Notes: generated from the letters alone by a model not told the origin. A stretch of DNA of 64,000 nucleotides from IMGVR_UViG_3300026484_000007:62001-126000, one strand, 5' to 3'. Numbered from the stretch's first letter, positions 28,933 through 60,668 are shown. A program made the numbers and translations.

Positions 28933-29027
28933 AAGTTTCTCCTTGTTTTTTTAATTTTTTTTATTTTTTAAATTTCTTCGGTATTTATAATGCGCCCCAA
29001 AGATAAAGCTAAAGCTTGGCGCATGCA
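28933..29027 (-). promoter_or_regulatory. Shared leader A (GCGCC hairpin, TATAAATA, A-tracts, AAGGAG)
   Basis: Near-identical to 30719-30801 and 31974-32060. Confidence 0.8.
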
Positions 29028-29129
29028 AAAAGAATAATAATTATTCATGAAATTAATGGAGAGTTTCGTCCGTAAGTTTTTAATTCTTTTAATTAACTTT
29101 TTAATTAAAGAGATCTAAAAAAGATCTCT

Positions 29130-29210
29130 TTAAAAGTCATTTTGATATCCTAGCATATTTAACCAGCTAAGAAAAATCAAAATCATTAGTATTTCTCCCA
29201 TTAATTCCAT
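29130..29210 (-). CDS. Putative 26-aa hydrophobic peptide MELMGEILMILIFLSWLNMLGYQNDF
   Basis: Hand-translated; AAAGGA RBS; followed by a GATC hairpin. Confidence 0.4.
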   Translation of the reverse strand: MELMGEILMILIFLSWLNMLGYQNDF

Positions 29211-29255
29211 GTCAAATCCTTTACTTTTAATTTATTTTTTTATTTATTTTTTTAT

Positions 29256-29702
29256 TTATTTTTTTATTTCATTTTGAAACCATTGAACTCTTTTACCTAT
29301 CGGTAAAGGTTCTTCTGGCACTAATTTATATTTAGGAAGAAGTTTTACTAATTCTTCGTAGTAATCTCTTCCTGCTAAAATTAAAAAAGTGATCTCTGAA
29401 AGATCACTTTTGAATTTTTCTTTTAACTGAGTATAAACTCTTTGAGCCCATTCTTTTTTTTCTTTTGGACTCATATTCTTGAGTGTAACGTCGTACTTCT
29501 CAATCTTTTTGAATGGATGTAATAATCCATGTTTTGCTGAAATGATGAAAATTTCATCATTTCTCGGATCTAATTTTGCTTTTTGCAAAGCCCAATTCCA
29601 ATGAGCTTTAAAAAGCATACTTGGAGAGTATAATTTATACGCCTCCATTTTATTATTTAATTTCTTGCTAACGCAAGAAATTAAGGCTACCTGTTTCTCC
29701 AT
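29256..29702 (-). CDS. DUF6884-like protein
   Basis: LISCxxKK, A.xLY.xS..F, IISAKHGLL, YDVTL, LAGRDY, L.IG.R motifs. Confidence 0.7.
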   Translation of the reverse strand: MEKQVALISCVSKKLNNKMEAYKLYSPSMLFKAHWNWALQKAKLDPRNDEIFIISAKHGLLHPFKKIEKYDVTLKNMSPKEKKEWAQRVYTQLKEKFKSDLSEITFLILAGRDYYEELVKLLPKYKLVPEEPLPIGKRVQWFQNEIKK

Positions 29703-29704
29703 TT

Positions 29705-30718
29705 TTATTCTCCTTCAGATTTAAACACAACACCTGGCAATGTTTTTTGCCAAAGCATTTTTGTAACTTCCATAGCTCCGTATGAAAGTTCCTTATATCT
29801 TCTGTGGATTATTTCACTAAACCACATTGAGTTCATATTAATTTTTGATAGGGTTTGCCATCCTCTATATGTGTTATTATCATGCGAACCCGTACAAACA
29901 TTATTTTCACGTGAATCGTGGTTTGCTTTTAAGTTTCCACTAAGATTTCCTGGTAATGAAATTCCTTGAATTCCTCCACCAGATGTTTTTATCGTTCCCC
30001 ATCCAAAATACGGAAGAACCATTCCTTTTGAAATAATTTGGAATGGAACTATAATTGATGGAATCACCGCCTTTCTTTCGATTTTAATTTTTCCCGAAAT
30101 TAACGCTAACGAAAAAACATCGTCGAAATTTTTTTCTTCTTCAACGACGCGACTTGATAGTTTTGCTGTTTCAGTAAAACTATTCCAAGTATACGCAGCG
30201 ATAATTGCATTCAATTCGATTGCTTTATTGTATTCTTCAAGATTTTTTTCGACTTCATTTAAGAATTCAAAAATCATTACAGTCCCTTTTGTGTTTAATA
30301 ATTTTTCTTTTTTTGGACTTTTTAAAATTGATAATAATGTTCCAGGATGCATTGGATTGATTAATAATTCATCTCCATCTACATCTGCAATAAAAAGCAT
30401 TCCTGCGAATTTATTCGTAGTATCCAATATTTGAATTCCGATTTCTAGTGCTTTTTCTAAAGTCACTTTTAATTTAAGAACTTTATCTGATACATTATCA
30501 TAAAATGTGCCTGCTGTAAAATACTCAATTGAAGAATACGAATCAAATACATCATTGTAATTTTTTACAACTTCTATGATCTTATTCCAATCGTTTTTAA
30601 TTGGGATAACGATGTCTCCCTTATCGTTAATTATTTCTAATCTTTCTGTGCTTTCTTCACTTCCGTTTCTAAAATCATTAAATTCTTCGTTTAACACTGC
30701 ATTAAAAAATTCAACCAT
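29705..30718 (-). CDS. Putative prokaryotic E2-like (UBC-fold) protein
   Basis: Only Cys lies in SGNL..NNVCTGS..GW, resembling the Prok-E2 N..VC.G site; flanked by E1 and JAB genes. Confidence 0.45.
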   Translation of the reverse strand: MVEFFNAVLNEEFNDFRNGSEESTERLEIINDKGDIVIPIKNDWNKIIEVVKNYNDVFDSYSSIEYFTAGTFYDNVSDKVLKLKVTLEKALEIGIQILDTTNKFAGMLFIADVDGDELLINPMHPGTLLSILKSPKKEKLLNTKGTVMIFEFLNEVEKNLEEYNKAIELNAIIAAYTWNSFTETAKLSSRVVEEEKNFDDVFSLALISGKIKIERKAVIPSIIVPFQIISKGMVLPYFGWGTIKTSGGGIQGISLPGNLSGNLKANHDSRENNVCTGSHDNNTYRGWQTLSKINMNSMWFSEIIHRRYKELSYGAMEVTKMLWQKTLPGVVFKSEGE

Positions 30719-30801
30719 AATTTCTCCTTGTTTTTTTAATTTTTTTATTTTTTTCCTTGGTATTTATAATGCGCCCCAAAGATAAGCTAAAGCTTGGCGC
30801 A
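30719..30801 (-). promoter_or_regulatory. Shared leader B
   Basis: Identical to leader C over ~85 nt. Confidence 0.8.
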
Positions 30802-30836
30802 AAAACGCATAAGCGTAAAGTTTTCTAATTGCTTAA

Positions 30837-31973
30837 TTACATGCTACAAAAAAAACGTTCTTCTGAAGAATCGTTTTTAGCTTCAGTAATTTCTTTACTA
30901 CCTTCTTCATCTTCTACGATTTCTTCTTTCCACTCGAAACCTTTTTTGATTTCATTTTTTTTCTTTTTCGATAATTGATTGTAATCAAATTCGAAAAGCT
31001 CTTCTCCATTTTCAGCATTATAAATTTTTTCTGGGTTAGAGAAAAGTTCGATCAGCTTGTAAGTTGCTACCCATAAGTTTAGTAGCAATACTGGTGTGTC
31101 GATAGAGCCGTATGTCTCAACAACTCCTTCTGAAATGTTTGGACATTTTGTGATTCTTATAGAATTTCCACTATGTCCAACCATAATAAAATTTGCTCCT
31201 TTTTCTGCTAGATATTTTCTAGTAGAAAAATCTGGTGCTCCAATGAAAATAGTATCAGGATTATTTTCGATGATTTTATCGATTTCATCTTTGCTCAGAT
31301 AATCCCTCACTAATGTCGTGGAATCTGAAAGATCAAATTCTTTATCAATTGTATCTAATTTAGATACAACATTCCCACGTGTTTGGAATCTACTGAATGC
31401 TTTATGCATTACTTGTTTCCCAACACGAAAAATATTTGTCAAAGCCCAATTATCTTTCTCATAAATAGAAAGATTTTTAAATAGTGGTCTTGCGTCGAAT
31501 ACGTCTTGTAGAATAGTTAAATTCCATAAAATGTTACTCATTGCCCCACCGAATCCGATCATTACAATTTCCAGATCTTTTGCGGGAATACTTTTTGAAC
31601 CACTTGCTTTAAAATAATTTTTCAATACCGAACTCGCAAATGGCAAGTCTTTAAAATAAGTTTTTGAAATTCCTGCTCCAGTCATGTAGTTAGTAAATCC
31701 ATCTGTTAAAAGATAAGATGGATAAAGTTCATCTGAACTTAAATCTTGATTGCAAACATCAGCTATTCCTGGATTTAGGAATGCTAAATTAGGATTAAAA
31801 ACAATTCCGTTTTTTTGAAGAACTTTTTTAACCTCATCTGGATCATTACTATCTAAATCAAATATTCTATGAATAAAAACATTATCTGATCCTAATTCAC
31901 TCTTTTCTGAAAATCTGTGTCTAATTTCTTCTTGTAGATATTCCACGAAACTTCTGTTAATTGTCTCTGCCAT
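30837..31973 (-). CDS. ThiF/MoeB/E1-like adenylyltransferase
   Basis: VMIGFGGAMS (GxGG), IYEKDNWALTNIFR (D..SNLxR equivalent), SKL, IFIGAPDFSTR (D..R). Confidence 0.8.
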   Translation of the reverse strand: MAETINRSFVEYLQEEIRHRFSEKSELGSDNVFIHRIFDLDSNDPDEVKKVLQKNGIVFNPNLAFLNPGIADVCNQDLSSDELYPSYLLTDGFTNYMTGAGISKTYFKDLPFASSVLKNYFKASGSKSIPAKDLEIVMIGFGGAMSNILWNLTILQDVFDARPLFKNLSIYEKDNWALTNIFRVGKQVMHKAFSRFQTRGNVVSKLDTIDKEFDLSDSTTLVRDYLSKDEIDKIIENNPDTIFIGAPDFSTRKYLAEKGANFIMVGHSGNSIRITKCPNISEGVVETYGSIDTPVLLLNLWVATYKLIELFSNPEKIYNAENGEELFEFDYNQLSKKKKNEIKKGFEWKEEIVEDEEGSKEITEAKNDSSEERFFCSM

Positions 31974-32060
31974 AATTTCTCCTTGTTTTTTTAATTTTTT
32001 TATTTTTTTCCTTGGTATTTATAATGCGCCCCAAAGATAAGCTAAAGCTTGGCGCATGCA
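31974..32060 (-). promoter_or_regulatory. Shared leader C
   Basis: Identical to leader B. Confidence 0.8.
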
Positions 32061-32094
32061 ATATATGCAAAATAAAAAGAATAAAAACCCAAAT

Positions 32095-32667
32095 TTAAAT
32101 TCTTAATTTTTTGGGTTTTTTCTTGTTTTCTTCTAATTTTTTATTAATATTCATTTCCGATAAATCGAAATGGACTCTTGTTTTGTCCAAATCGATTATT
32201 TCCGATCGAAATTCTGCGAGAATTTCGATCGGATCATATTCATTATTATTAAAATATAGCGAGTTAATTTGTCTACTCAGTTCCCCGCTATATTTTATAC
32301 CGTACAACACCCATAAACAGGCGCACGCGATTACCTCAATATCGCGTCCGTTACGGTCGACTAAATCGATACGGTATTCCGTATCGATCGCTCTTCTATG
32401 TCTTTTCCCGTTTTTATCGATTACGTAATTATATAACGTAATCTTTTTTAAAACATTTTTTTCAGAAGGATGCCACCAATAATTGATATATCCTTCTCTT
32501 TTTCCTAATTCCATAATAGCTAGAAAATCAATTTTGAAAAAAAGCGGATCATGAAATTTATTTGCAAGATCTACTATCAGATCTTTATATAATTCTTTCC
32601 ACTTTTTCCATAATTCAAAATTACTTTTTAATTGTGATTTAAATGATTTTCTATTTCTTCTTGTCAT
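32095..32667 (-). CDS. Hypothetical basic protein
   Basis: AAGGAGG RBS; locally CG-richer sequence. Confidence 0.65.
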   Translation of the reverse strand: MTRRNRKSFKSQLKSNFELWKKWKELYKDLIVDLANKFHDPLFFKIDFLAIMELGKREGYINYWWHPSEKNVLKKITLYNYVIDKNGKRHRRAIDTEYRIDLVDRNGRDIEVIACACLWVLYGIKYSGELSRQINSLYFNNNEYDPIEILAEFRSEIIDLDKTRVHFDLSEMNINKKLEENKKKPKKLRI

Positions 32668-32704
32668 TTTTTCTCCTCCTTAAATTTTTACAATTTCGGG
32701 GAAT

Positions 32705-32880
32705 AAAAAAACACGAGATCTTCCATTCCCTCTGCTATTAAAATATCAATCTTTAATATACGAGTTCTAAACTTTAGAACTCGTATATATCGCTTGTATC
32801 GAAAATAGATGCTACTTAAAAAATCAAGTTTTTTACAGTTTTTTCTAACGACAAAAAAACCCTCGCTATAAAAGCGAGGT
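32705..32880. repeat. Dispersed palindrome copy plus hairpin-T7-GTCGTTAG terminator of the topoisomerase operon
   Basis: atatacgagttctaaactttagaactcgtatat core; cctcgctataaaagcgagg hairpin. Confidence 0.85.
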
Positions 32881-32892
32881 ATTATTTTGGTA

Positions 32893-34296
32893 TTATTTTT
32901 TAGGTAATTTTAAAAAAACTTGTCTTAAATGTCTTAATTCATCTAACCAGATTTCGCGAGGATCTTGTTTTTCAACCTCTTGATATTTCTGTTTAAGTTC
33001 TTTAATTTTTTCATTAAATTCTTGAATTTTTTCGGTAGTTAATGACCATAAAGGCATACTTAATAAATAATCGTATTTATCATTAATTTTATAAAAATCG
33101 AACTTTTTCAATTGATTTTCAATGTTAGATTTTTTACGTTTTTCTATGATAATTTCTTTTTTAAAGATTTTTTCTAAGAATTTAATTTTATTTTCTGTAA
33201 TTATAATATCATATTTTATTTGATCAAGAATAAATAGTTTTCTTTTATGATAAAGAGTTAATCTTTCAATAATCCAATCTTTTAGATACTCTGCTAATGT
33301 ATCATATTCTAAAATAGTCTTATTTTCATAAGAATATTTAAGAAAAGTCAGAGTTTCAGAATCTTTTGTAATTAATTTAAATAATTTTAATAATTCTTCT
33401 TCTGATTTTTCATAGATCTCTATTGGAACCTTAATTTCAAAATAAAATGAATTCTTTACGCAATTGTCCGACCAATCAACTACAATATTTTTATCTTCTA
33501 ACTCAGATATAATATTAACCATTTTTTCTCTATCGTATCCAGGTGGAACTTCATTAATAATTATAGTTCCATAACGTTTAGTGGATTTGCTTTTTTCAAG
33601 ATTTCCATAGAAAATAAATTGTTTATCATTTTCTCCACGTTCGATTTTTCCATTATAATATGGAAATTTTACTGGAATATATTTTGGAATTTTCTTAATT
33701 TTTCTTTCAAGAATTCCAATTAAAAGATCAATAATAAAATTTGGGTCTCTTGGTAAAATACTTGCACTATAACCTACCGCAATTCCATTAAAACCATTAA
33801 TTATACTTAATGGAATTATAGGCATTAAATACAATGGTTCAATTTTCTTTCCTTCAAGATATTGCTCTTCGTAAATATTTTCATCAATTTTCGGAAAAAT
33901 TAATTTAGCGATATCACTAAATTTTCCACTTGTATATCTTGGACTACTCGCCGCTTGATTGGTTCTATATCCAAATGAACCTTTTGGCTCAATTAAGTTA
34001 ATATTGTTTTTATAATCAGCTGCTAATGTTTCAAAAACGTTATATGTAGATTTATCTCCATGCAAATAATTAGTCTGATTATACACCAATGAATAAATCT
34101 CCGCTGTCTTAATTTTTTTATTCGGGATCTTGGAAAGAACGTATAATTCTTTCCTTGCCGTTTGACTTAAAGTATCATGAAAACTAGGCATCTGTTGAAT
34201 TAATTTATAAACAGAATAACTTAAATATTCTTTATCTGCAAATTCTTTTACATTGTATTCTTTAGCCATAAAATTCTCCTTATTTTTATACCGCAT
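32893..34296 (-). CDS. Type II DNA topoisomerase, GyrA/ParC-like subunit (T4 gp52-like)
   Basis: YLHGD, PKGSFG, SPRYT catalytic Tyr, NGFNGIAVGYS, YLLSMPLWSLT. Confidence 0.92.
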   Translation of the reverse strand: MRYKNKENFMAKEYNVKEFADKEYLSYSVYKLIQQMPSFHDTLSQTARKELYVLSKIPNKKIKTAEIYSLVYNQTNYLHGDKSTYNVFETLAADYKNNINLIEPKGSFGYRTNQAASSPRYTSGKFSDIAKLIFPKIDENIYEEQYLEGKKIEPLYLMPIIPLSIINGFNGIAVGYSASILPRDPNFIIDLLIGILERKIKKIPKYIPVKFPYYNGKIERGENDKQFIFYGNLEKSKSTKRYGTIIINEVPPGYDREKMVNIISELEDKNIVVDWSDNCVKNSFYFEIKVPIEIYEKSEEELLKLFKLITKDSETLTFLKYSYENKTILEYDTLAEYLKDWIIERLTLYHKRKLFILDQIKYDIIITENKIKFLEKIFKKEIIIEKRKKSNIENQLKKFDFYKINDKYDYLLSMPLWSLTTEKIQEFNEKIKELKQKYQEVEKQDPREIWLDELRHLRQVFLKLPKK

Positions 34297-36190
34297 TTAT
34301 ATCGAATAATTCGATGTTTTTCTTAATTATATTTTTACGGTATTCTCTATCTTCTTGCATCCAAGCTAATAAAGTTTTTTCATCTTCTTCCGTAAATTTA
34401 AATGTTAATAAAAGATCTTCGAAAGAATATCTTTTGAACATCTCTTCCCATTCTTCTTCAGTTAAAGAACCTAAACCTTTTTTATAATCAAATACACAGC
34501 CTTTTGCTTCTTCAGATTTTTCAAATTCTTTTAATTCTTGAAAATCAAAAATCATTTTATCAATTTTATCATTTTTATATATAACTACAATCGGTGTTCT
34601 AAAACTATGAATTTTGCCAGTTTTAAGATACGTTTGAGCAGTCATATAAAAATAAGAAACAAGTAAAATATTAATATGGAATCCATCGAAGTCAGCGTCC
34701 GCACCGATAACGATATTTTCATATTCTAATTTTTCTTGATTACCACTAAAATCAATTCCAAGAATTTTAGCAATTTCCATTAATTCTTTATCGGTTTTTA
34801 ATTTTTTAGGATCTTTTAATACATTACTTGTCTTTCCTTTAATAGGATAGAATCCATAAAAATCTCTACCTACACCATTTATAATACTTCCTATCGCAGA
34901 ATCTCCTTCTGAAATGATAAAGTATTTTTTCTGTTTTCCAGCTTTCCAATATTTTACTGGAGTTTTAATTTTCTTTAAAGTTTTATCAATTTCTTTTTTA
35001 TCCTGAACCATTTCTTTAGCTTTATAAAAGTCAATAATCGGTCCAGTAATTGATTTGTCTTTATAGATTTTATCAATAAATCTACTTTTAGCAATTTCTA
35101 AAACTTCATTAGCAATTTCTGGAAATTTAGATGGAGTATTTGTTGTCGCTGTTTTCATTTGAGAAGTAAATCTCGGATTTGGAATATTTCTATAAACGAC
35201 AATTAAAAATATTTTATTTCTGACATCAGCAAATTTAATATTTTTATAACGTTTTTGTAATTTTTCGGTTACTGGTATTAATATACGTCTTTCAACGTAT
35301 TCTAATGTGCTTCCACCTTCATAAGCATTTACTCCATTTACAAAATGGATAAAGTTATAAGTATCTGAACCACCAACTGCAATACTAACATTATCTGATT
35401 CAATTATATTTAATTTTCCATCAAAGAATAATTTATTCACTGAATTAAGATTATTTATTTTAATAACTTTTCCATTAAATTTAAATTGAATTTCTGGATA
35501 AGTAACACTTAAAAAAATTAAATCAAAATAGATTAAATCTTTATAAATTTCATCAATTTTATCTAATTTGAATCTTTCGAGATCTGGATAAAATGTTACT
35601 TTTGTCCCCATTTTTTTCTTTGAATCAGTAACTTTGTAATCAACATCTTGCATATTATTTTTACAAGTTACCTTAAAGAATTTATTTCCATCATCGGTTT
35701 CTCCAATAAATTTTTTACTAAAAATAGTAGCTAATGAAGATCCAACTCCATTCTGACCAATACTTGTATTCGAAGTATTACTATCGTCAAAATTACTTCC
35801 AGCTTTTAAATTGGTCCAAGCCATTAAAGGCATTAAACTATCAGGAATTTCATTTCCTTGACTATCATAAGCTGGTTTAATAGGTATTCCTCTACCATTA
35901 TCTTCAACGACAAATTTTTCATCATCAATGATTATACTAATTTTATTAGCATAATTCCCTTGAGTTCTTAAGTATTCATCAATACTATTATCTAGCAATT
36001 CTCTCATTAATTTTAAAAGACCAGGAATGTATTCGATTTCATCAATAACTATTTTTTGATGATCTTCAGAAGATACGATAATAGGTCTTTTAATTTTTTG
36101 AGGAGTTATAGCTCCGATATACATTGGAGCTCTTAAGAGAGCATGTTCAATATCATTTAATTTAATGATTTTATTTTCTTGCATTTTCAT
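34286..36190 (-). CDS. Type II DNA topoisomerase, GyrB/ParE-like subunit (gp39+60-like)
   Basis: ELLDNSIDE, EDNGRGIP, GQNGVG, SEGDSA, PIKGK, DADFDGFHI, KGLGS. Confidence 0.93.
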   Translation of the reverse strand: MKMQENKIIKLNDIEHALLRAPMYIGAITPQKIKRPIIVSSEDHQKIVIDEIEYIPGLLKLMRELLDNSIDEYLRTQGNYANKISIIIDDEKFVVEDNGRGIPIKPAYDSQGNEIPDSLMPLMAWTNLKAGSNFDDSNTSNTSIGQNGVGSSLATIFSKKFIGETDDGNKFFKVTCKNNMQDVDYKVTDSKKKMGTKVTFYPDLERFKLDKIDEIYKDLIYFDLIFLSVTYPEIQFKFNGKVIKINNLNSVNKLFFDGKLNIIESDNVSIAVGGSDTYNFIHFVNGVNAYEGGSTLEYVERRILIPVTEKLQKRYKNIKFADVRNKIFLIVVYRNIPNPRFTSQMKTATTNTPSKFPEIANEVLEIAKSRFIDKIYKDKSITGPIIDFYKAKEMVQDKKEIDKTLKKIKTPVKYWKAGKQKKYFIISEGDSAIGSIINGVGRDFYGFYPIKGKTSNVLKDPKKLKTDKELMEIAKILGIDFSGNQEKLEYENIVIGADADFDGFHINILLVSYFYMTAQTYLKTGKIHSFRTPIVVIYKNDKIDKMIFDFQELKEFEKSEEAKGCVFDYKKGLGSLTEEEWEEMFKRYSFEDLLLTFKFTEEDEKTLLAWMQEDREYRKNIIKKNIELFDINAV

Positions 36191-36471
36191 TCTTTATCCT
36201 TTAAAAATGATTGTAATCTTTTTAATCTATTTTTCTTTTTAATTAATTTTTCATAAATATTATTAATTAAAGGAATATTTTGAGCTTCTTTTTCAAATAC
36301 CTCCTTATAAAAATTTTTTTGTAAAAGATCAATGTCAATTTTTATATTCTCAATGAGATCTTTTAAAGATACATTATGAAGTTTTAAGTATTCATCTATT
36401 GTAATTCCATATATATCATCTGTGTTTTGGATTGATATGTCCGGCGTTTTAATTAAATCATCTTTTATCAT
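36187..36471 (-). CDS. Hypothetical protein
   Basis: Translationally coupled 94-aa ORF. Confidence 0.55.
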   Translation of the reverse strand: MIKDDLIKTPDISIQNTDDIYGITIDEYLKLHNVSLKDLIENIKIDIDLLQKNFYKEVFEKEAQNIPLINNIYEKLIKKKNRLKRLQSFLKDKE

Positions 36472-39775: not shown

Positions 39776-39942
39776 GAAAAACTCGTGATCCTAAAACGTT
39801 GCGCTTCATTAGATACACAAAGATATATAGCAGTTCTAAAAATTTTAGAACTGCTTTTATATCGCTTGTATCTAAAAAAGATGCTACGTAGAAAATCAAG
39901 TTTTTTCTAGTGACAAAAAAACTCTCGCGCTCGCGAGAGTTT
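39776..39942. repeat. Dispersed palindrome copy plus hairpin-T7-GTCACTAG terminator
   Basis: Full arms gaaaaact..agcagttctaaaa/ttttagaactgct..agttttttc; actctcgcgctcgcgagagt hairpin. Confidence 0.9.
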
Positions 39943-42534: not shown

Positions 42535-42535
42535 T

Positions 42536-50075: not shown

Positions 50076-50079
50076 AAAT

Positions 50080-52010: not shown

Positions 52011-52058
52011 TTTTTCTCCTTTGCTTTTAAATTGATTCGATTAAGACTCAATTAAGTC

Positions 52059-52589: not shown

Positions 52590-52617
52590 TTTCTTCTCCT
52601 TCGGTTTTTAATTTTTT

Positions 52618-52833: not shown

Positions 52834-52842
52834 TTTTTATCC

Positions 52843-52888
52843 TTTTTTTCTGACGACAAAAAAAAGTGATCTTTAAAAGATCACTTTC
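52843..52888 (-). terminator. Hairpin + T7-GTCGTCAG-A7
   Basis: aaagtgatctttaaaagatcacttt hairpin next to the motif. Confidence 0.65.
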
Positions 52889-53555: not shown

Positions 53556-53602
53556 TTTATCTCCTTTTTATAAGTTTATTTTTTTTAATTTTTTTAATTT
53601 TT

Positions 53603-54313
53603 TTAGAAATTAATTGTAATTCCGTCGTCATCATCTTCTTCAGTCTCTTCAATTACTTCTTGAGTTTTTTCTTGAGAGTTTGAAGATGGATGGATACCTA
53701 TATTTTCCGTCGTTACTCCATTTACGATAATATCGTCAGATGGTATATCTTCTTTGATTAATAATGATTCAAGTACATTATTAAAATCTTCGATATCACT
53801 AACATCTTGTGATAAAGAATGTTCAATAATATCTTTAACAGCTTGAACATCATTTTCATCAAAAACTGCTTTTCTTCTACCTTTCTCTTCGAAAACTGGT
53901 TCTATAAATTCGTGTATACTTTGAAGAGTTTCTTGATATTGAAGATTTATTAATTTTATAACATCTTCTGGAATATCATCTTTGCTAACGTATAATGGAA
54001 TTTTTATATAACCGATTTTATCAAGAAAGGCGTTAAGTCCTTTTTCTTTTAAATGCTCTTCTTTTCCATTGATAAAATTTTTAAGATTAAGATAAGTTTG
54101 ATTTAATCCTAATTTTTTATACAGAGCATTTTTATTTGGAATATCTTTAAGAATTAATCTTAATTCCTCCTCAAAATTGATTATTTCATTTTTTGAGATT
54201 TCTTGATTAATATCTTGATTAACATCTTGGCTAATATTTTGACTTTGACTTTCAGGTCCCTCGTTTTTATGAATTTCTTGATTCATTTCTTCTCCTTTTA
54301 AAAGCTCTAACAT
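53603..54313 (-). CDS. Hypothetical acidic protein
   Basis: Probable start at MNQEI; acidic tail. Confidence 0.6.
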   Translation of the reverse strand: MLELLKGEEMNQEIHKNEGPESQSQNISQDVNQDINQEISKNEIINFEEELRLILKDIPNKNALYKKLGLNQTYLNLKNFINGKEEHLKEKGLNAFLDKIGYIKIPLYVSKDDIPEDVIKLINLQYQETLQSIHEFIEPVFEEKGRRKAVFDENDVQAVKDIIEHSLSQDVSDIEDFNNVLESLLIKEDIPSDDIIVNGVTTENIGIHPSSNSQEKTQEVIEETEEDDDDGITINF

Positions 54314-54374
54314 ATATCTTTAATTGATCTTTGAAAGATCATTTGCGTTCTAATTCTACTCAATATCTCGCGAC

Positions 54375-54866
54375 TTATAGATCCCACGGAAATAACAACC
54401 AACCTTTTGGTTTTTTTTCTGCGTAATAATCTACTAAGTCTCCTTTATTTCTTCCTTTATACATAACTGCTGTATAAATTTCAACATCTGCGAATTCATT
54501 ATTTGCGTCTAAAATTGCTTTAATTGTTTCGCCAGTATCAGTCAAATCATCGACTAATAAAATTTTTTTGCCATCAAATTTTTTTAATTGATGCCTGATA
54601 TGATTTATAATATCATCGGTTACTTCTTTAGGCTCAGCATCATCTTCATAAAGAGTTACATCTATTAAATCAGTTTCTCTAATATTAAGATAATAACTTA
54701 AATATCCTCCTGGAACAATTCCTCCTCTATTTATCATCACTATTTTATCAAATTTTTTATCTTCATGACATACATCAGATTGTATTTCTTCTGCCAATTT
54801 TTTACATGCGTTTTGAACATCTTCTGGCGTAATTAATACTTTTCCATCATCCAATTTTAGCATCAT
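54375..54866 (-). CDS. Type I purine phosphoribosyltransferase (Gpt-like)
   Basis: INRGG, LLVDDLTDTGET PRPP loop, WLLFPW C-terminus. Confidence 0.88.
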   Translation of the reverse strand: MMLKLDDGKVLITPEDVQNACKKLAEEIQSDVCHEDKKFDKIVMINRGGIVPGGYLSYYLNIRETDLIDVTLYEDDAEPKEVTDDIINHIRHQLKKFDGKKILLVDDLTDTGETIKAILDANNEFADVEIYTAVMYKGRNKGDLVDYYAEKKPKGWLLFPWDL

Positions 54867-55119
54867 TTTCTCCTTTTTTGATTAAAAATAAATCTTTATG
54901 ATTCATCCAAAAACTTTTATGTGTTAAAGGATGATATAATTTTACTGTATGATTTGAATGAAAATTTTTATCATAATCGATCACAATAAAAATTTCATTC
55001 ATTAGGTTTTCCAAACCATTGAAATCTTCGATAGTTTTCCCCTGGACTTTGCTATAATCAATACTTTTTATTTTTACGTATTGATTAATAATGTCAGGGT
55101 TTAGCTGAATTATTCTCAT
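54847..55119 (-). CDS. Hypothetical protein
   Basis: AAGGAGG RBS. Confidence 0.55.
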   Translation of the reverse strand: MRIIQLNPDIINQYVKIKSIDYSKVQGKTIEDFNGLENLMNEIFIVIDYDKNFHSNHTVKLYHPLTHKSFWMNHKDLFLIKKGENDAKIG

Positions 55120-55171
55120 GCACTGTTACCTCCTTTCATAATTTTTTTGTAAAAAATAGACGGAATGATGG

Positions 55172-55243
55172 TTACATAACCATCATCCCGTCTTCCATAA
55201 AGTCTTCTGAGGGGTCGAACCCCTCATTTAAAATAATCTTCAT
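55172..55243 (-). CDS. Putative 23-aa peptide MKIILNEGFDPSEDFMEDGMMVM
   Basis: Hand-translated; AAAGGAGG RBS; stop codon inside a strong hairpin (55158-55193) followed by a T-tract. Confidence 0.45.
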   Translation of the reverse strand: MKIILNEGFDPSEDFMEDGMMVM

Positions 55244-55332
55244 TTTTCCTCCTTTGGATTTTAATTTAGGTGAGAAGCGATTTAAAGTCACTCTCACCTA
55301 CTATTATAATATCAATGTTTATTTAAGATATT

Positions 55333-57495
55333 CTAAAGCTCTTCATTTTCATCTTCGAATTTCATTCCGAAAACATGAAGGGCATTATTTAGAGTTTTCT
55401 TAGTCACTGAATTATATTTATCTTTAAGATAATATTCACCATCTCTAATATATTTAATAATAAAGTTTTGCTTTTCATCTAAAGCATCAGATTTAATTGT
55501 ATAAATTTCTTTTAGAACAGCATTATCTTCTTTATGCGCTAATAACGCTGCAAGTGATTGCCAACTTACGTGAGCTCCACCACCTTTTTTTCTACCTCTT
55601 ACTGGCTGACCAGTGATTTTTGAATACGCACTTGTAAAACTAACACTATTAAATTTTCCAAAACTTGTATGATGTAATTTTAGCATATAATTCCAAGAGC
55701 TAAATAACATCAACTCTGTTTCATTATAATCATTAAATGGATCTTTAAATCCATAATTTTTTCTAAGCCATTCTAATAATTCAGATGAATATTTGATTTT
55801 TTGCTTACCTATATTTAGGTCGAATCTTTTCGCGTATGGTTTAATAAAAGTATTCATAAGCTCTTTATATGAAATATTCGGGAAGTTTGGGACATATAAA
55901 TAAAAATTGTTTTTATTTATATCATTTATAAATAATTTCGCAAATTCTTCATTATCTAAATTATTAATGATATTTTCAACATCTTGATAATAATCAAGAT
56001 CATATTTTTTTATAAAATTTTCATTTATAAAATTAATTTTTTCTTTTAGAGTTTCTATCGTTTCCGATCCTTCTAAGATCTTTTTAACAGTATTCTCTAC
56101 ATCGATAATGATTTTTGAAACCGCTAATTCAAATACAACTCCCCAGTTATTTCTTCCAGGAATTCCTAATGAATTAAATATCATATCAAAAGGTTTTCCA
56201 GTGCTTGGATCTTTTGGCATTAACTCATCTGGAATAATCATTGCAATAGTTGCTTTTCCAGCAAATAAGTTAGTGAATTTATCACCTCTTGTTGTGTTTA
56301 AATAAATCTTTGAATCTAATTCAATTAGAAAATCCATATCATTAAATTCTTTGATTAAGTATTCTTCCATCAACATTTGCTTATAATGCTTATATTGTTT
56401 TTCCATTGATAAATACTGTGAATAAATTTGCTCAGTTAATTCTTTAGCTTTTTCTTTATTCATTCCAATATTTAAAAATGAATCATAAACATTTTTCTTC
56501 TTTTTAACATTAGCTATAATTAAATCTTCTAATTCATTAATTATACCTCTTGTGTAAATATATTTTTCATCAAGTTTTCTTATTTCTTTAATAAGATCTT
56601 TTAAAGATTCGTCCGTAAGTTCTTGATCCATATCTATCGATCTTAATTCTCTAAGAATATCTTCATTAAATATATGAAGTTTCATAGTAACAACATCGGA
56701 ATTTAATAATCCATCAATTTTTTTAGTAAAAAATTTAGATGGAGTTTTATCAGCATTGATAATTTCTGATGAAAAGTGTTTACTAGTATCAATTTCAAGA
56801 TACTTGATATAATCATCTTTCACATGCATTCCAACATAAGGTAGATATGTTTCAATTTCTTTTTCTTCATCTCTTACTATTTTAAAATATTTCCAATGTT
56901 TTAGAATTGGAATATAAGTTTTTTTAATTACAGTCTTTTGAGCTTTTTTTGAAAAACTTTCAGAAATAACAATTGCATCATCTGCGTTGTATCCAAAGAA
57001 TGAAGTGAATAAAATGTTTGCTCTGTATCCTATTTTAGGTAATTTATTTTCAATATTCATTCCGGTATAATCATAAAGAACTTCTCCTTTTTTGAAGAAT
57101 TTTTTATCTATTTTATATTTTAAATCTAATGAATACTCGATTAACTTTCTACCTTCTGGCAAATGTTTAGTAATCATTTTTTTCTGATTTTTATAATAAA
57201 TTACTAAAATATTATCATCGTTATGTAACACAATTCCATCATCTTCCGCGAATTCCACGAAAGGAGATTGGATTGTACTAATCTTTTGAAATTCTTTATC
57301 AATCATAAAAGGAGTATCAACATTCTTTGATAACATTGGTTGAACTCCTTGTTTGTAAGACATATTTAATCTATTATTGTCTACTGTTTGTGCGAAAGGT
57401 ACGAAAATTTCGATTTGAGGACTGAAAATTGTTTTTACTAACTTTTGTGTTTTTTCCGTTTCTTTTTTCATCTCTTTTGCTATTTCTTTTGCCAT
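55333..57495 (-). CDS. Multisubunit RNA polymerase beta-like subunit, C-terminal part
   Basis: FGYNADDAIVISE, GDKF..FAGKAT, NSLGIPGRNN.G, YMLKLHH, YSKITGQPVRGRKKGGG. Confidence 0.92.
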   Translation of the reverse strand: MAKEIAKEMKKETEKTQKLVKTIFSPQIEIFVPFAQTVDNNRLNMSYKQGVQPMLSKNVDTPFMIDKEFQKISTIQSPFVEFAEDDGIVLHNDDNILVIYYKNQKKMITKHLPEGRKLIEYSLDLKYKIDKKFFKKGEVLYDYTGMNIENKLPKIGYRANILFTSFFGYNADDAIVISESFSKKAQKTVIKKTYIPILKHWKYFKIVRDEEKEIETYLPYVGMHVKDDYIKYLEIDTSKHFSSEIINADKTPSKFFTKKIDGLLNSDVVTMKLHIFNEDILRELRSIDMDQELTDESLKDLIKEIRKLDEKYIYTRGIINELEDLIIANVKKKKNVYDSFLNIGMNKEKAKELTEQIYSQYLSMEKQYKHYKQMLMEEYLIKEFNDMDFLIELDSKIYLNTTRGDKFTNLFAGKATIAMIIPDELMPKDPSTGKPFDMIFNSLGIPGRNNWGVVFELAVSKIIIDVENTVKKILEGSETIETLKEKINFINENFIKKYDLDYYQDVENIINNLDNEEFAKLFINDINKNNFYLYVPNFPNISYKELMNTFIKPYAKRFDLNIGKQKIKYSSELLEWLRKNYGFKDPFNDYNETELMLFSSWNYMLKLHHTSFGKFNSVSFTSAYSKITGQPVRGRKKGGGAHVSWQSLAALLAHKEDNAVLKEIYTIKSDALDEKQNFIIKYIRDGEYYLKDKYNSVTKKTLNNALHVFGMKFEDENEEL

Positions 57496-57513
57496 TTTAA
57501 TTCCTTTCTTTTT

Positions 57514-58734
57514 TTATAAATTTTTTAATTTAAGTCTACCATATTCATTTACTAACGTTTGAGTTGTAAACACTACATTAGCTCCAACGTTTGCCGCCGA
57601 TACACTAATTGGACAAAGAATTCCTTGTGCACTAGAATCATTTCTCTGCCAAGATTTAGGCAATCTTCCATCATTAATAACACTAATATCTTGAGATACT
57701 TTATTTATTAATGGTAATGCGTAAGGAATACTGATATCATATAAATTTCCTCTATGAAGATTATTTGTAAAACCAGATGTCATAATTACTTTTTGATTCA
57801 TTGTAATTAAAAAGTTTTGACCGTTTTTATCTATTACTCCATAAAGTAATCTTAAATAAGATTCAAAAATCGGTTTAATTAAATACTCAGAATGAATAAT
57901 TCTTCTATTATGAATATCAGACATATCTATTTTTTCTCCAGTTAAAAATAACTCGATGATTTTCCAAACGATATTTTTTATTCCTCTAAATCCATAGAAA
58001 TCTTCAAATAGTTCGTGATAAAAATCTAAAATTAAAAATGTATCAATCCATTTAACAAGATCGATATCATCGAAAAAAGATTCTTTATGGAAACCCAAAA
58101 ATTTTACAAATTTTCTTTTATCTCCAAGAGTGGTTTCTTTAGTATGAATTAAACCATTTTGATAAAGTTCTTCAAGTTTATCTTCATCATCTTTAAAGAT
58201 CACTCTTAAGAATAAATCTAATTCTATTTTTTTATAATTAAAAAATACAATTCTTTCAATTTTCTTTTTGCTTTTATTAGCAACATGAAAATCAAATGTA
58301 AAATTATACATTGGATTTAAATTTGCATAAATTTTATTTTTAATTACTTTTGCATCTGGTTCCGACATAACCCTATCAATAGGAGCTTTTTCAAGCATTA
58401 AAATTGGAACGTAAAGAGCGTTGTTTAAAGTATAATAATTTTTTTGAATCAATTTAGGCACAAAGAAACTAAACTCTCTTGAAAAGTTTTTGTATTCTTG
58501 ATAAATATAATATTCATCTTGATAGGTAATAAAATCTCCGAGGTATGGAGATATATTACTTTTCTTTTCAATTAACACTTTATATTCTGGATCAATCAAT
58601 TTAATTTTATTAAAAATTTCGTGAACCGTCTTTTCGATCTTTTGATGATCAACTTCTCTCCACTCGTGTAAATGCATAAAATTTTTATCGCTTTCTGCCG
58701 TTTTATAAACATTTTCGTATACAATTGTATTCAT
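57514..58734 (-). CDS. RNA polymerase beta-like subunit, N-terminal part
   Basis: DIHNRRI..EY, GILCPISVS..NVG (cf. GRICPIETPEGPNIG); adjacent to the C-terminal part. Confidence 0.72.
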   Translation of the reverse strand: MNTIVYENVYKTAESDKNFMHLHEWREVDHQKIEKTVHEIFNKIKLIDPEYKVLIEKKSNISPYLGDFITYQDEYYIYQEYKNFSREFSFFVPKLIQKNYYTLNNALYVPILMLEKAPIDRVMSEPDAKVIKNKIYANLNPMYNFTFDFHVANKSKKKIERIVFFNYKKIELDLFLRVIFKDDEDKLEELYQNGLIHTKETTLGDKRKFVKFLGFHKESFFDDIDLVKWIDTFLILDFYHELFEDFYGFRGIKNIVWKIIELFLTGEKIDMSDIHNRRIIHSEYLIKPIFESYLRLLYGVIDKNGQNFLITMNQKVIMTSGFTNNLHRGNLYDISIPYALPLINKVSQDISVINDGRLPKSWQRNDSSAQGILCPISVSAANVGANVVFTTQTLVNEYGRLKLKNL

Positions 58735-58809
58735 TGTCCTTCCTTTCTTTATTTTAATTATTTCAACTTGATTAGTATTATTTCTTTAAAATCTTTTTTT
58801 TAGATTTTT

Positions 58810-60444
58810 TTATATTTTAATCTTATTAGTTCTTCTTTTAATAAGCTGTGCCGGCTGAGAATTCTTTTTTAATAATGGAAAATAAATAGTGAACTTCATT
58901 GGTTTTTCTGGATCAGAAACCAATTTAACCTGATTGTACTCAAGCAAAACTTCATTCTCTTTTATTTCATTGATATATTGCTCAATTTTTCCACCCTCAT
59001 GTAATTCTGCTATGTACTTATCCAGAATTTCTTTTAAGATTAAAAAATCATTAATCTTTTCAACCCAGAATTGTTCTTCGTTTTCGTAGTTTCTATTTAT
59101 GAAATCTTTAAAAGATTCTCTAAAATATTTTCTGGGAAGAAAATCTAAAACCAATCTTTCTGTTTTTTTATCTAAATGATAGACTCCGTATTTGTCTTTT
59201 TTATTCAGGTATTCGAAAAAATTATATAAAAAATGTTTTCCGTGAGTTCTTTGATATTCCATAACTTCATAATTATAATAACTTGATGGAATTTCTTTCT
59301 TGAACATTTTAAAAAAGTCGTCCGAATGATAAATATTAGACACGTTCATCAAAGAAATATCTCCTCTCATATTATAATTCTTTTTCAAATACGACGTAAA
59401 TGTAGTTACCATAAATCGTTTTTCAAATTTATTTTTGATTATATTTCTAAGTGTCTCCGAAAAGAATTTCAAAATTTTCGCTGGATTATGTAATCTAATT
59501 TTTATTTTTTTAGATTTTATGTATTTATAATTTTCATGATTCTTAAACTCTGGATAATTCAATAAAGTACTCGTAAATTTTTTCATCGGTGTAGGATAAT
59601 TCATTGTATAAATTGATTTTTTTAAAGTAATTTTATTTATACTAAAGTTTATTCTACTCGGAATGATATTAGTAAAAAGATAAATTTTTCCGAATAATAA
59701 TTCAAATATATTAACCGCCTTTTTGATTCTTCTAATCATAAAAGGATTAGCATGAAGCTGATAATTTATTTGATCGGGCGCTATATGAATAGCTTTAAGT
59801 AAAAGATCAATATTCTTTCTGCTGTTTTCATCAAAGAGATTTTCGTTTTTTAAATACTCTTGGATCTTATTAGGATCTGATATAAAAAAGTATATAAAAT
59901 AATTAAACGAAAAAGATCGAATATTCATAAAGAAATGAAATTTTTCATCTATGTACTTTCTGAACTCTTTTTTATCTTTTAAATTTTCAGGTAAAGTATC
60001 TTCAAATAAATAATACACAAATGTTTCAAATATATTCAATCCTTCTCTATTTTGCAAAAAATTTCCTGTGCGGTCAGCAAACTCATTCAGATCTAAAAAA
60101 GATCTTAATTCTAAATTAATAAAAGAAATTTTCTTTCCATTTTTATCTTTAATTTCCATCTCGTTGAATAAAATTTCGAAAAGTCTCATATATCCAAAGA
60201 ACAAATAAAACACTTCATTGTGTGTAATTGATTCCATTTGAATTTTTAAGAAATTCTTAAATTCAAAACTGAAATAATTAAATAATGTTTTTAAAAAGGG
60301 ATCTTTAATAGATCCTTTATTCTCTTCAAAACTCTTTTTTAAAGTTTTAATTAAAACCGGCAATGATTCTTTAAAATTCTTTTTTGCCTTCGCAACTTCT
60401 CCATACGGCATCTGAATTATTTTTATTCTTTTTCTTTTAGCCAT
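58810..60444 (-). CDS. Hypothetical basic protein between RNAP genes
   Basis: 544 aa, AAGGAG RBS. Confidence 0.7.
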   Translation of the reverse strand: MAKRKRIKIIQMPYGEVAKAKKNFKESLPVLIKTLKKSFEENKGSIKDPFLKTLFNYFSFEFKNFLKIQMESITHNEVFYLFFGYMRLFEILFNEMEIKDKNGKKISFINLELRSFLDLNEFADRTGNFLQNREGLNIFETFVYYLFEDTLPENLKDKKEFRKYIDEKFHFFMNIRSFSFNYFIYFFISDPNKIQEYLKNENLFDENSRKNIDLLLKAIHIAPDQINYQLHANPFMIRRIKKAVNIFELLFGKIYLFTNIIPSRINFSINKITLKKSIYTMNYPTPMKKFTSTLLNYPEFKNHENYKYIKSKKIKIRLHNPAKILKFFSETLRNIIKNKFEKRFMVTTFTSYLKKNYNMRGDISLMNVSNIYHSDDFFKMFKKEIPSSYYNYEVMEYQRTHGKHFLYNFFEYLNKKDKYGVYHLDKKTERLVLDFLPRKYFRESFKDFINRNYENEEQFWVEKINDFLILKEILDKYIAELHEGGKIEQYINEIKENEVLLEYNQVKLVSDPEKPMKFTIYFPLLKKNSQPAQLIKRRTNKIKI

Positions 60445-60477
60445 TTTCTCTCCTTATTTTTTTTAATTTTTTTCTTC

Positions 60478-60632
60478 GAAAACTTGTGTTTCCAGAACGT
60501 TAAGCATCATTGGATACACAAAGATATATAGCAGTTCTAAAAATTTTAGAACTGCTTTTATATCGCTTGTATCTAAAATAGATGCTACGTGGAAAATCAA
60601 AGTTTTTACAGTTTTTTCTAGCGACAAAAAAA
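60478..60632. repeat. Dispersed palindrome copy plus T7-GTCGCTAG-A6 motif
   Basis: Close match to the 39776 copy. Confidence 0.9.
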
Positions 60633-60637
60633 GAAGA

Positions 60638-60668
60638 GTATTTATATAGCGCCCTCTTCAACGGCGCT
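60638..60668 (-). promoter_or_regulatory. GCGCC hairpin + GGGCGC-NN-TATAAATAC putative phage promoter
   Basis: Same core and spacing as the three leaders at 28.9-32.1 kb. Confidence 0.5.

What the first reader, a model, noticed from the sequence alone, without database searches (positions are those of the whole stretch)
28933..60668. Putative phage promoter: GCGCC hairpin ending in GGGCGC-NN-TATAAATAC
Seen on the minus strand: tgcgccaag..ttggggcgc-at-tataaatac in three leaders (B and C identical, A slightly different), and agcgcc..gggcgc-ta-tataaatac at 60638-60668 with a different loop but the same stem and spacing. GC-rich stems are rare in this genome. TATAAATA equals the T4 late -10 element, and hairpin promoters are known for N4 virion RNAP. 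Inference: a promoter class for the phage multisubunit RNAP. The identical leaders could also drive cassette duplication or shuffling.
Basis: partly seen in the sequence, partly recalled or inferred. Interest (0 to 1): 0.62.

Follow-up and report, generated by a model that had tools for sequence, protein, structure and literature searches.

The report
Conserved RNA pseudoknot leader in jumbo phage
The GC hairpin followed by TATAAATAC is real and non-random, but it looks less like a promoter than a compact RNA pseudoknot in front of seven phage genes, with the same conserved core found in RNA viruses and in SAM-II riboswitches.

Summary
GGGCGC-NN-TATAAATAC preceded by GCGCC occurs 4 times in the window and 7 times in the 272.6-kb phage genome. 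All copies are on the minus strand and intergenic; shuffled sequence gives about none.

The promoter reading is not the best supported. In every copy the 3' part of the hairpin loop pairs, in register, with the bases right after TATAAATA. That makes an H-type pseudoknot: S1 [A/U]GCGCC:GGCGC[U/A], a 9-nt crossing strand N-UAUAAAUA, and S2 of 6-7 bp.

S1 and S2 change in a compensatory way between copies and at an orthologous locus in a related phage contig. G·U pairs are tolerated.

The same core occurs in RNA viruses, where no DNA promoter can exist. It also forms P1 plus L3 (the "A-minor twist" scaffold) of SAM-II riboswitches. Rfam 15 has no family for the phage version.

In phage contigs the pseudoknot sits 38-50 nt before the start codon, ahead of an A-rich leader, and marks the 5' edge of inserted gene cassettes.

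My best reading is a portable, mechanically stable 5'-leader RNA element. Its function as a decay or ribosome roadblock is inferred only.

A promoter role for TATAAATA is not excluded. No transcript data could be obtained.

The parts
28975..29023 (-). Pseudoknot copy 1. S1 is T+GCGCC (29023-29018) paired with GGCGC+A (28996-28991). L1 is 14 nt. S2a TCTTTGG pairs with S2b CCGAAGA (28981-28975). The crossing strand is T-TATAAATA.
28930..28974 (-). A-rich leader with Shine-Dalgarno AAGGAG, ending at the ATG of the 584-aa ORFan (27178-28932).
30754..30801 (-). Pseudoknot copy 2. S1 is TGCGCC:GGCGCA. S2 is TCTTTGG:CCAAGGA, with a G·U pair at a different position than in copy 1.
30716..30753 (-). 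A-rich leader and SD, ending at the ATG of the 337-aa ORFan (29705-30718). Identical to the leader of copy 3.
32009..32056 (-). Pseudoknot copy 3, identical to copy 2.
31971..32008 (-). A-rich leader and SD, ending at the ATG of the 378-aa ORFan (30837-31973).
60633..60668 (-). Pseudoknot copy 4. S1 is AGCGCC:GGCGCT, L1 is GTT, S2 is GAAGAG:CTCTTC. It starts 17 nt after the stop of the RNAP beta'-like gene (60685-62697).
60611..60632 (-). T7-GTCGCTAG-A6 element directly after copy 4. The same element follows copy 5 and the L247 copy, and precedes copy 7.
60531..60555 (-). Palindromic TTTTAGAACT cassette core between copy 4 and the 544-aa gene. The minus-strand arm (60442-60530) leads to the ATG at 60444; the other arm (60556-60610) points the opposite way.
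32078..32116 (-). Terminator-like hairpin plus T-run between the upstream gene (32095-32667) and copy 3. Similar hairpins lie at 30848-30880 (before copy 2) and 29105-29133 (before copy 1).
58810..60444 (-). 544-aa ORFan downstream of copy 4. It is absent at this position in relatives with 55-63% identical beta' genes.

Best explanation
The conserved unit is a cis-acting RNA element, not primarily a DNA signal. It is an H-type pseudoknot at the 5' end of an A-rich, strongly Shine-Dalgarno-bearing leader.

Stem 1 is the invariant GC hairpin, 6 bp with a co-varying A:U/U:A closing pair. The 3' part of its loop, plus the conserved extra G, pairs with the C of 'TAC' and the next 5-6 bases to form stem 2. 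N-UAUAAAUA is the strand that crosses stem 1.

S1 plus this A-rich strand is the same module that forms the 'A-minor twist' scaffold (P1 + L3) of SAM-II riboswitches. The phage copies lack the SAM pocket, so what remains is a bare, compact, stable knot.

Shown: the pairing, the covariation, the occurrence in RNA-only genomes, the fixed 38-50 nt distance to the start codon, and the position at the 5' edge of inserted gene cassettes.

Inferred: the knot acts as a context-independent mechanical barrier at the head of the downstream cistron. It would stop 5'-to-3' decay or scanning by nucleases and ribosomes coming from upstream, and keep the A-rich leader free for ribosome loading. Whatever gene travels behind it would then get a stable, translatable mRNA segment.

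The stated confidence covers 'functions as an RNA pseudoknot leader element'. I put the specific roadblock/stabiliser mechanism at only about 0.3.
For: - In-register loop/3'-flank pairing of 6-7 bp in all five distinct phage sequences. Copies 1/7 (CCGAAGA) and 2/3 (CCAAGGA) pair with the same loop TCTTTGG through G·U pairs at different positions.
- Copy 7 has a compensatory S1 change (GCGCT:AGCGC). The closing pair is T:A in copies 1-3 and 7, and A:T in copies 4, 5, L247 and L298.
- At an orthologous locus, upstream of the HTH gene (50% aa identity over 60 residues, E 3e-16), L247 keeps the motif with a different S1 pair and an entirely different but fully complementary 9-bp S2.
- Permutation test on 44 non-redundant instances: mean in-register S2 is 4.36 bp, against 1.77±0.17 (maximum 2.5 in 2000) when loops and flanks are re-paired.
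- The same core lies 9-15 nt after ORF stops in dicistro-like, tombus-like and narna-like RNA-virus contigs.
- The same core is P1 + L3 of SAM-II riboswitches (Rfam SAM_alpha, 50 and 37 bits). There L3 adenines pack in the P1 minor groove as a stable scaffold (PMC12434664).
- In L247, L298 and copies 4 and 6 no terminator separates the upstream stop codon (9-25 nt away) from the knot, so the knot is likely to be transcribed there (inferred from co-directional genes; no transcript data).
- Conservation between copies 2 and 3 begins exactly at the base before GCGCC and runs to the ATG.
Against:
- Terminator-like hairpins sit just upstream of copies 1, 2, 3 and 5. A promoter is therefore needed nearby, and no conserved one is seen upstream of S1.
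- TATAAATA equals the T4 late -10 element. It resembles TATATAAATAG, found at a fixed distance from TTTTAGAACT in another repeat class of this genome.
- One metagenomic family (GGTAAGTGCATCAGA-hairpin-TATAAATAC-SD) keeps S1 and L3 but has almost no S2.
- S2 of copy 6 and of L298 is weak and AT-rich.
- Ordinary frameshifting H-type pseudoknots do not stall Xrn1 (PMC10321173), so the roadblock idea is not guaranteed by the topology.
- With L1 = 0 (L247) the full S1 and S2 cannot both form.
Confidence: 0.58

Rival explanations
1. One reading: a DNA promoter class for a phage multisubunit RNAP. TATAAATA serves as the -10-like element and the GC hairpin as an upstream recognition or insulating element. 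Transcription would start a few bases after TATAAATA.
For: - All copies are intergenic, co-oriented with the gene 38-50 nt downstream in 5 of 7 copies.
- Terminator-like hairpins lie upstream of copies 1, 2, 3 and 5.
- The conserved block starts at the hairpin, not upstream of it.
- TATATAAATA also sits at a fixed spacing from TTTTAGAACT in front of GC-rich non-coding stretches.
- The element marks cassette boundaries like the T4 PeSL promoter-terminator elements.
Against: - It does not explain the loop/flank covariation with G·U pairs.
- The identical core exists in RNA viruses and in a riboswitch fold.
- Copies 4 and 5 are followed by a T7..A6 element, an oppositely oriented arm and a 12-bp palindrome before the gene, which already has its own TTTTAGAACT element.
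- Relatives L247 and L298 carry the motif inside what look like operons, 9-11 nt after a stop codon.
- Loops of 9-21 nt are unlike N4 promoter hairpins.
Confidence: 0.25
2. The knot is a translational operator for a phage RNA-binding protein. This would resemble the T4 gene 32 leader, where a 5' pseudoknot nucleates binding along an A/U-rich unstructured leader. The seven genes would form a regulon.
For: The architecture is the same: a pseudoknot followed by about 35 nt of A-rich unstructured leader up to the SD. The T4 gene 32 operator is recalled from established literature, not tested here. Seven unrelated genes share the element. Three of them are weakly HTH- or sigma-like.
Against: The invariant parts (S1, L3) are shared with RNA viruses of other hosts and with riboswitches, which argues for an intrinsic fold rather than recognition by a phage-specific protein. 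No candidate binding protein was identified.
Confidence: 0.1
3. The hairpin or knot is a transcription terminator, or a 3'-end stabiliser, of the upstream gene.
For: Copies 4 and 5 begin 17-24 nt after a stop codon, and S2 is followed by a run of seven T. In RNA viruses and in L247/L298 the motif begins 9-15 nt after a stop codon.
Against: Copies 1-3, 6 and 7 are followed by A-runs, not T-runs. Separate hairpin + T-run terminators already precede copies 2, 3 and 5. The distance to the downstream ATG is far more constant (38-50 nt) than the distance to the upstream stop (9-233 nt).
Confidence: 0.07

Closest known systems
SAM-II (SAM_alpha, RF00521) / SAM-V riboswitch fold
   Same: Both are H-type pseudoknots. 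The phage S1 ([A/U]GCGCC:GGCGC[U/A]) plus the crossing strand N-UAUAAAUA-C is letter for letter the P1 + L3 of a widespread subset of SAM-II riboswitches. In SAM-II, L3 adenines wrap the P1 minor groove as a stable 'A-minor twist' scaffold (PMC12434664).
   Different: The phage copies lack the conserved L1 (GAUUUG) and P2 (GCUUGC / GCUAAAG) that make the SAM pocket. L1 and S2 vary freely. S2b is 25-35 nt from the SD, so no SD sequestration is evident. No Rfam hit even at E<=10.
Coremin-type and class 3 exoribonuclease-resistant RNAs (xrRNA) of RNA viruses
   Same: A short GC hairpin, a spacer of about 10 nt rich in A (coremin GUUAAACUAC), and loop-to-spacer pseudoknot pairing. Located in intergenic regions and 3' UTRs just after ORFs. 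They act as a sequence-context-independent roadblock (PMC10520033, PMC10321173, PMC12397905).
   Different: The coremin loop must follow YGAD/YGNNAD and needs a second hairpin, and its S2 is only 3 bp. Class 3 xrRNAs have an internal loop and a ring around the 5' end. None of these features was found here. Nuclease resistance is untested.
T4 late promoter (TATAAATA) and N4 virion-RNAP hairpin promoters
   Same: The 8-mer equals the T4 late -10 element. N4 early promoters are DNA hairpins.
   Different: T4 late promoters need no hairpin and use gp55/gp33/gp45. N4 hairpins have 3-nt loops and are read by a single-subunit RNAP. Neither predicts pairing between the loop and the bases after the -10 element.
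PeSL promoter-terminator cassettes of T4-like phages
   Same: Short conserved intergenic stem-loop-containing repeats that flank variable ORFs and coincide with insertions and deletions between related phages (PMC2839356, PMC4122927). Here L298 and the 544-aa gene show the same pattern.
   Different: PeSLs are a sigma-70 early promoter plus a terminator hairpin, with no pseudoknot. Here the conserved part is an RNA knot plus a translational leader.
T4 gene 32 mRNA operator
   Same: A 5' pseudoknot followed by an A/U-rich unstructured leader up to the start codon (from established literature).
   Different: That operator is a single autoregulated gene with a different pseudoknot sequence. Here there are seven unrelated genes and no identified binding protein.

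Membership tests
T4-type late promoter | TATAAATA centred near -10 upstream of a late gene | tested here: met
   Exact TATAAATA lies 38-50 nt before the ATG in 5 of 7 copies. The word is not rare in this AT-rich genome: 156 copies, 120 of them in coding sequence.
T4-type late promoter | Recognition by gp55-type late sigma with gp33 and the sliding clamp | not tested
   No search for gp55/gp33 homologues was made. The phage encodes split multisubunit RNAP genes instead.
N4 virion-RNAP hairpin promoter | 5-7 bp stem with a 3-nt loop, read by a single-subunit virion RNAP | tested here: not met
   Stem length fits, but the loops are 9-21 nt and variable. The RNAP genes found are multisubunit beta/beta'-like.
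Jumbo-phage virion-RNAP early promoter | Highly conserved AT-rich motif of about 10 nt, found many times upstream of early operons (PMC7598289) | tested here: not met
   Only 7 copies, all on one strand within 70 kb. A different motif, TTTTAGAACT-SS-TATATATC, has at least 41 copies on both strands across the genome.
SAM-II / SAM-V riboswitch | H-type pseudoknot with P1 and an A-rich L3 in its minor groove | tested here: met
   S1/L3 are identical to those of SAM-II members L278, L260, L310-L312 and L316. S2 pairing is shown by covariation. The minor-groove packing itself was not tested.
SAM-II / SAM-V riboswitch | Conserved L1 (GAUUUG) and P2b (GCUUGC / GCUAAAG) forming the SAM-binding triplex; score above the Rfam threshold | tested here: not met
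   These sequences are absent in all phage copies. No SAM_alpha hit at E<=10 over window 28700-32300, nor at E<=2 in L247/L298.
Coremin xrRNA | 4-bp hairpin with a YGAD (or YGNNAD) loop, an 8-10 nt spacer and a required second hairpin | tested here: not met
   The loops are 9-21 nt with no YGAD consensus, and no conserved second hairpin is present.
xrRNA in general | Blocks 5'-3' exoribonuclease in vitro; ring topology around the 5' end | not testable with these tools
   Needs an Xrn1 / RNase J1 assay and a 3D structure.
Intrinsic terminator | GC-rich hairpin immediately followed by a U-run | tested here: not met
   S1 is followed by N-UAUAAAUA. Only copies 4 and 5 have a T-run, and it comes after S2. 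The consensus scan did not call any copy a terminator.
PeSL-like mobile regulatory cassette | Conserved intergenic repeat at the borders of indels between related phages | tested here: met
   The L298 insert sits between two genes that are adjacent in this phage. The 544-aa gene is extra relative to L181-L184. This rests on only two cases.

The most novel reading that the evidence does not exclude
GCGCC:GGCGC plus UAUAAAUA is a portable, kingdom-spanning 'A-minor twist' pseudoknot module. DNA phages, RNA viruses and riboswitches would have acquired it independently or by transfer. In its bare form (no ligand pocket) it would be a new class of nuclease/ribosome roadblock: the first xrRNA-like element of bacteriophages, travelling with gene cassettes as a self-contained expression leader.
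Probability: 0.22. Interest if true: 0.82.

Novelty: new variant of a known kind. Interest (0 to 1): 0.62.

Why it matters
If this is right, the element is not a promoter logo. It is a small self-folding RNA device that a jumbo phage places in front of selected, often newly acquired, genes.

It reuses the structural scaffold of SAM-II riboswitches without the ligand site. The same scaffold appears right after open reading frames in unrelated RNA viruses. That would link riboswitch architecture, viral nuclease- or ribosome-blocking knots and phage gene-cassette exchange.

It would also give a 36-50 nt part that may confer mRNA stability or insulation independent of context. For annotation, it warns that TATAAATA-like words in AT-rich phages need not be -10 elements.

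Rfam 15 has no family for it.

Tried and rejected
- Close DNA relatives: megablast against phage records found nothing.
- Rfam: no family at gathering score in the window. Only chance-level hits at E<=10 around copies 1-3 and in 11 motif-bearing loci.
- Ideas considered and dropped: pistol or other small ribozymes, preQ1-I, tmRNA, HUH/Rep nonanucleotide origins, and dicistrovirus IGR IRES pseudoknots. Either the defining sequences are absent or Rfam gave no hit.
- Sigma-70 reading: no acceptable -35 at 16-18 bp, and the scan called no promoter at any copy.
- Frameshift or readthrough signal in the RNA viruses: no slippery heptamer at proper spacing, and in-frame stops follow (inspection output).
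- The genes behind the seven copies are not paralogues. They have no informative Pfam, PHROG, NCBIfam or Atlas match.
- Literature search for the 8/9-mer with 'pseudoknot' found nothing relevant.
Full report
**What the window is**

The window is bases 62001-126000 of a single 272,602-bp contig with 27.2% GC. Nearly all genes in the window are on the minus strand. They include a topoisomerase II subunit and split RNAP beta/beta'-like genes. The nearest named phages (AR9/PBS1, Staphylococcus and Yersinia jumbo phages) share only about 30% identity in the RNAP gene. This is a jumbo phage of an unsampled lineage. Metagenomic relatives with 55-63% identical beta' exist.

**The observation**

GGGCGC-NN-TATAAATAC occurs four times in the window, always on the minus strand, and never in 100 shuffles. 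Each copy is preceded by GCGCC, giving a hairpin. Genome-wide there are seven copies: genome 90981, 92760, 94015, 122638, 155823, 160102 and 159349. The last has stem GCGCT:AGCGC, a two-sided change that keeps the pair.

A relaxed descriptor scan finds exactly these seven. The descriptor allowed any 5-bp stem with at least 3 G/C, a loop of 3-25 nt, one mismatch in TATAAATA, and at least 4 paired bases after it. Twenty shuffled genomes gave 0-1 hits. Hairpins with all-G/C stems are rare in this genome.

**What a promoter model does not predict**

In every copy the last bases of the hairpin loop, together with the conserved G that precedes GGCGC, are complementary to the C of 'TAC' and the bases that follow.

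| Copies | S2 pairing | L1 |
|---|---|---|
| 1 and 7 | TCTTTGG : CCGAAGA | 14 nt (copy 1), 9 nt (copy 7) |
| 2 and 3 | TCTTTGG : CCAAGGA | 13 nt |
| 4 and 5 | GAAGAG : CTCTTC | 3 nt |
| 6 | TTTTTAG : CTAAAGA | 2 nt |

- The two variants that face the same loop differ at two positions. Each stays paired only through a G·U wobble, which points to RNA.
- The base before GCGCC pairs with the first base after GGCGC and co-varies: T:A in copies 1-3 and 7, A:T in copies 4 and 5.
- The resulting anatomy is an H-type pseudoknot. S1 is 6 bp, L1 is 2-14 nt, S2 is 6-7 bp and abuts S1, and N-UAUAAAUA (9 nt) crosses S1.
- Nested folding finds S1 (about -10 kcal/mol), or at copy 2 the competing S2 hairpin.

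**Relatives**

Two AT-rich metagenomic contigs carry the motif.

- L247 (GC 0.23): the motif sits 9 nt after an upstream stop codon and about 46 nt before the ATG of a protein homologous to the HTH protein behind copy 7 (50% identity over 60 residues, E 3e-16). At this orthologous place S1 is GCGCC:GGCGC instead of GCGCT:AGCGC. S2 is TTAGAAGAG:CTCTTCTAA instead of TCTTTGG:CCGAAGA. The sequence is entirely different but still complementary.
- L298 (GC 0.25): the knot, an A-rich leader and a 109-aa ORF lie between two genes that are adjacent in this phage, 19 nt apart with 55-58% identity.
- Contigs with beta' genes 55-63% identical lack both the motif and the 544-aa gene that follows copy 4 here.

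So the element sits at the 5' edge of inserted genes.

**The motif outside phages**

An exact-pattern scan of IMG/VR gave 66 loci, 19 of which also have the GCGCC arm.

- Most of those 19 are RNA viruses. L036 has an RdRp/helicase ORF of 1845 aa, the motif 10 nt after its stop, a 330-nt intergenic region and then picornavirus-type capsid domains. L021 and L032 have tombusvirus-type coat proteins. L043 has a mitovirus-like RdRp.
- In these the loop again pairs in register with the 3' flank, for example GGCATG:CATGCC, GTTATG:CATAAC and CCTTGTCG:CGACAAGG.
- Over 44 non-redundant instances the mean in-register S2 is 4.36 bp. It falls to 1.77±0.17 (maximum 2.5 in 2000 trials) when loops and flanks are re-paired.
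- In L057 the motif is the P2 region of a group I intron.

The largest recognisable family there is the SAM-II riboswitch.

- Rfam SAM_alpha scores 50 and 37 bits on L278 and L260. The alignment shows the motif to be its P1 and L3.
- In the bacterial species genomes, five of nine matches to an 18-nt version of the core are the same riboswitch, each with a terminator behind it.
- In the solved SAM-II structure, L3 adenines twist around the P1 minor groove as an 'A-minor twist', described as a stable scaffold that forms first (PMC12434664).

The invariance of GCGCC/GGCGC and UAUAAAUA therefore has a structural RNA explanation that needs no promoter. The phage copies are not SAM-II riboswitches. 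The L1 and P2 sequences that make the SAM pocket are absent, L1 and S2 vary freely, and Rfam gives no hit even at permissive thresholds.

**Position in the phage**

In seven of nine phage-type cases the knot ends 38-50 nt before the ATG. An A-rich leader with a shared AAUUAAAAA..AAGGAG stretch lies between them. The distance from the upstream stop codon ranges from 9 to 233 nt. The element therefore belongs to the downstream gene.

Copies 4 and 5 are special. The knot is followed by a T7-GTCGCTAG-A6 element, an oppositely oriented arm, a 25-bp palindrome and then the leader of the gene. L247 has the knot and the T/A element directly in front of the leader. This suggests the palindromic cassette was inserted later.

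**How it probably works**

The invariant parts are shared with genomes of unrelated hosts, while the variable parts carry no conserved pocket. I therefore favour an intrinsic, mechanical role. A compact knot at the head of a cistron would stop 5'-to-3' decay or scanning from upstream and insulate an unstructured ribosome-loading leader. The gene behind it would then be expressed whatever lies upstream.

The placement in RNA viruses, directly after ORFs in intergenic regions and 3' UTRs, parallels that of coremin and class 3 xrRNAs (PMC10520033, PMC12397905). This step is inference. [quoted passage not shown]

**Why the promoter model stays alive**

- Terminator-like hairpins precede copies 1, 2, 3 and 5, and no conserved sequence lies upstream of S1.
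- TATATAAATA also stands at a fixed distance from TTTTAGAACT in front of GC-rich non-coding stretches.
- One metagenomic family in front of small secreted-protein genes keeps S1 and L3 with almost no S2.

If a phage RNAP starts after TATAAATA, the knot would form only on read-through RNA. I give this model about 0.25.

**The better promoter candidate**

TTTTAGAACT-SS-TATATATC occurs at least 41 times on both strands. It is often a divergent palindromic pair, and each arm is followed by one of two conserved leaders of about 60 nt that run into SD-ATG. This matches the description of jumbo-phage early promoters as highly conserved AT-rich motifs that can be found bioinformatically (PMC7598289). 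It is untested.

**Limits**

- My pattern searches fixed S1b and L3, so their invariance outside this genome is partly by design.
- Several singletons in the metagenome scan may be chance; roughly 20 are expected in a database of that size by my own rough, uniform-composition estimate.
- One sample (Ga0081606) holds dozens of largely non-coding contigs with the core followed by an ACAAT repeat. They look like repeats of an unidentified eukaryote. I did not pursue them, and nothing suggested human sequence.

Noticed in passing
window 60531-60555; also about 7526-7560, 8985, 14218-14270, 15457, 32763-32790, 39832-39865; genome-wide: The repeat TTTTAGAACT-SS-TATATATC has at least 41 strict copies, more with TTTTATATC variants. 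It is often a divergent palindromic pair (GCAGTTCTAAAA-TTTTTAGAACTGC). Each arm is followed by one of two conserved leaders of about 60 nt that run into SD-ATG. It is a likely early-promoter class with conserved 5' leaders.
   Followed up: partly
G000:C1 53572, 128713, 174935, 215738, 216588 (outside the window); variant at window 32763 (-): A second class, TTTTAGAACT-N~17-GATATATAAATAG, is followed by GC-rich, highly self-complementary non-coding stretches (for example genome 215.6-216.6 kb and 128.5 kb). These may be phage non-coding RNAs.
   Followed up: no
window 60611-60632; L001 about 9396-9417 and 5796-5817; L247 273-292: A T7-GTCGYTAG-A6/7 element lies next to several pseudoknot copies and at the far end of many 'arm B' leaders. 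It reads alike on both strands. It may be a bidirectional stop or insulator.
   Followed up: partly
window 58810-60444: A 544-aa ORFan lies between the RNAP beta'-like gene and the 406-aa gene. Relatives L181-L184 lack it, so it looks like an inserted cassette.
   Followed up: partly
L278 2964-3041, L260 1151-1224, L310-L312, L314, L316: A widespread subset of SAM-II riboswitches, in genomes of 32-68% GC, has exactly AGCGCC/GGCGCU as P1 and UUAUAAAUAC as L3. Most of them score below Rfam's SAM_alpha threshold.
   Followed up: partly
L036 about 6113-6145, L066, L002, L021, L032, L051, L053, L043, L165: Dicistro-, tombus- and narna-like RNA-virus contigs carry the same pseudoknot 9-15 nt after the stop codon of the replicase or coat ORF. 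No Rfam family matches it.
   Followed up: partly
L057 12083-12762 (-): In a group I intron (61 bits) the P2 region is the same GCGCC hairpin + UAUAAAUAC.
   Followed up: partly
L189, L191-L193, L196-L197 and about 35 more loci from sample Ga0081606: Dozens of mostly non-coding contigs from one sample carry the core with a 23-nt loop, a conserved 25-nt upstream block and an (ACAAT)n repeat behind it, often at contig ends. This is a repeat family of an unidentified, probably eukaryotic, genome.
   Followed up: no
L190 (3 copies), L224 (2 copies), L222, L242, L261, L273, L307, L315: A family GGTAAGTGCATCAGA-GCGCC-GAGGAG-GGGCGC-NN-TATAAATAC lies about 10 nt before the SD of small signal-peptide-like proteins. 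It keeps S1 and L3 but has almost no S2 pairing.
   Followed up: partly
L001 4966-5625, 8938-9312, 9455-10063: The genes behind copies 5, 7 and 6 show weak HTH or sigma-70 region 4/ECF-like similarity. Some pseudoknot-led genes may be transcription regulators.
   Followed up: partly
window 29256-29702 and L001 8063-8911: A DUF6884 protein and a QueE-like radical-SAM protein lie downstream of copies 2 and 7. This hints at nucleotide or base-modification genes.
   Followed up: no
G000:C1 17865-18313 and 270233-270290: A cluster of five tRNA genes (Arg, Ser, Asn, Thr, Gln), and a six-fold tandem repeat of TATAAATAAT near the contig end.
   Followed up: no
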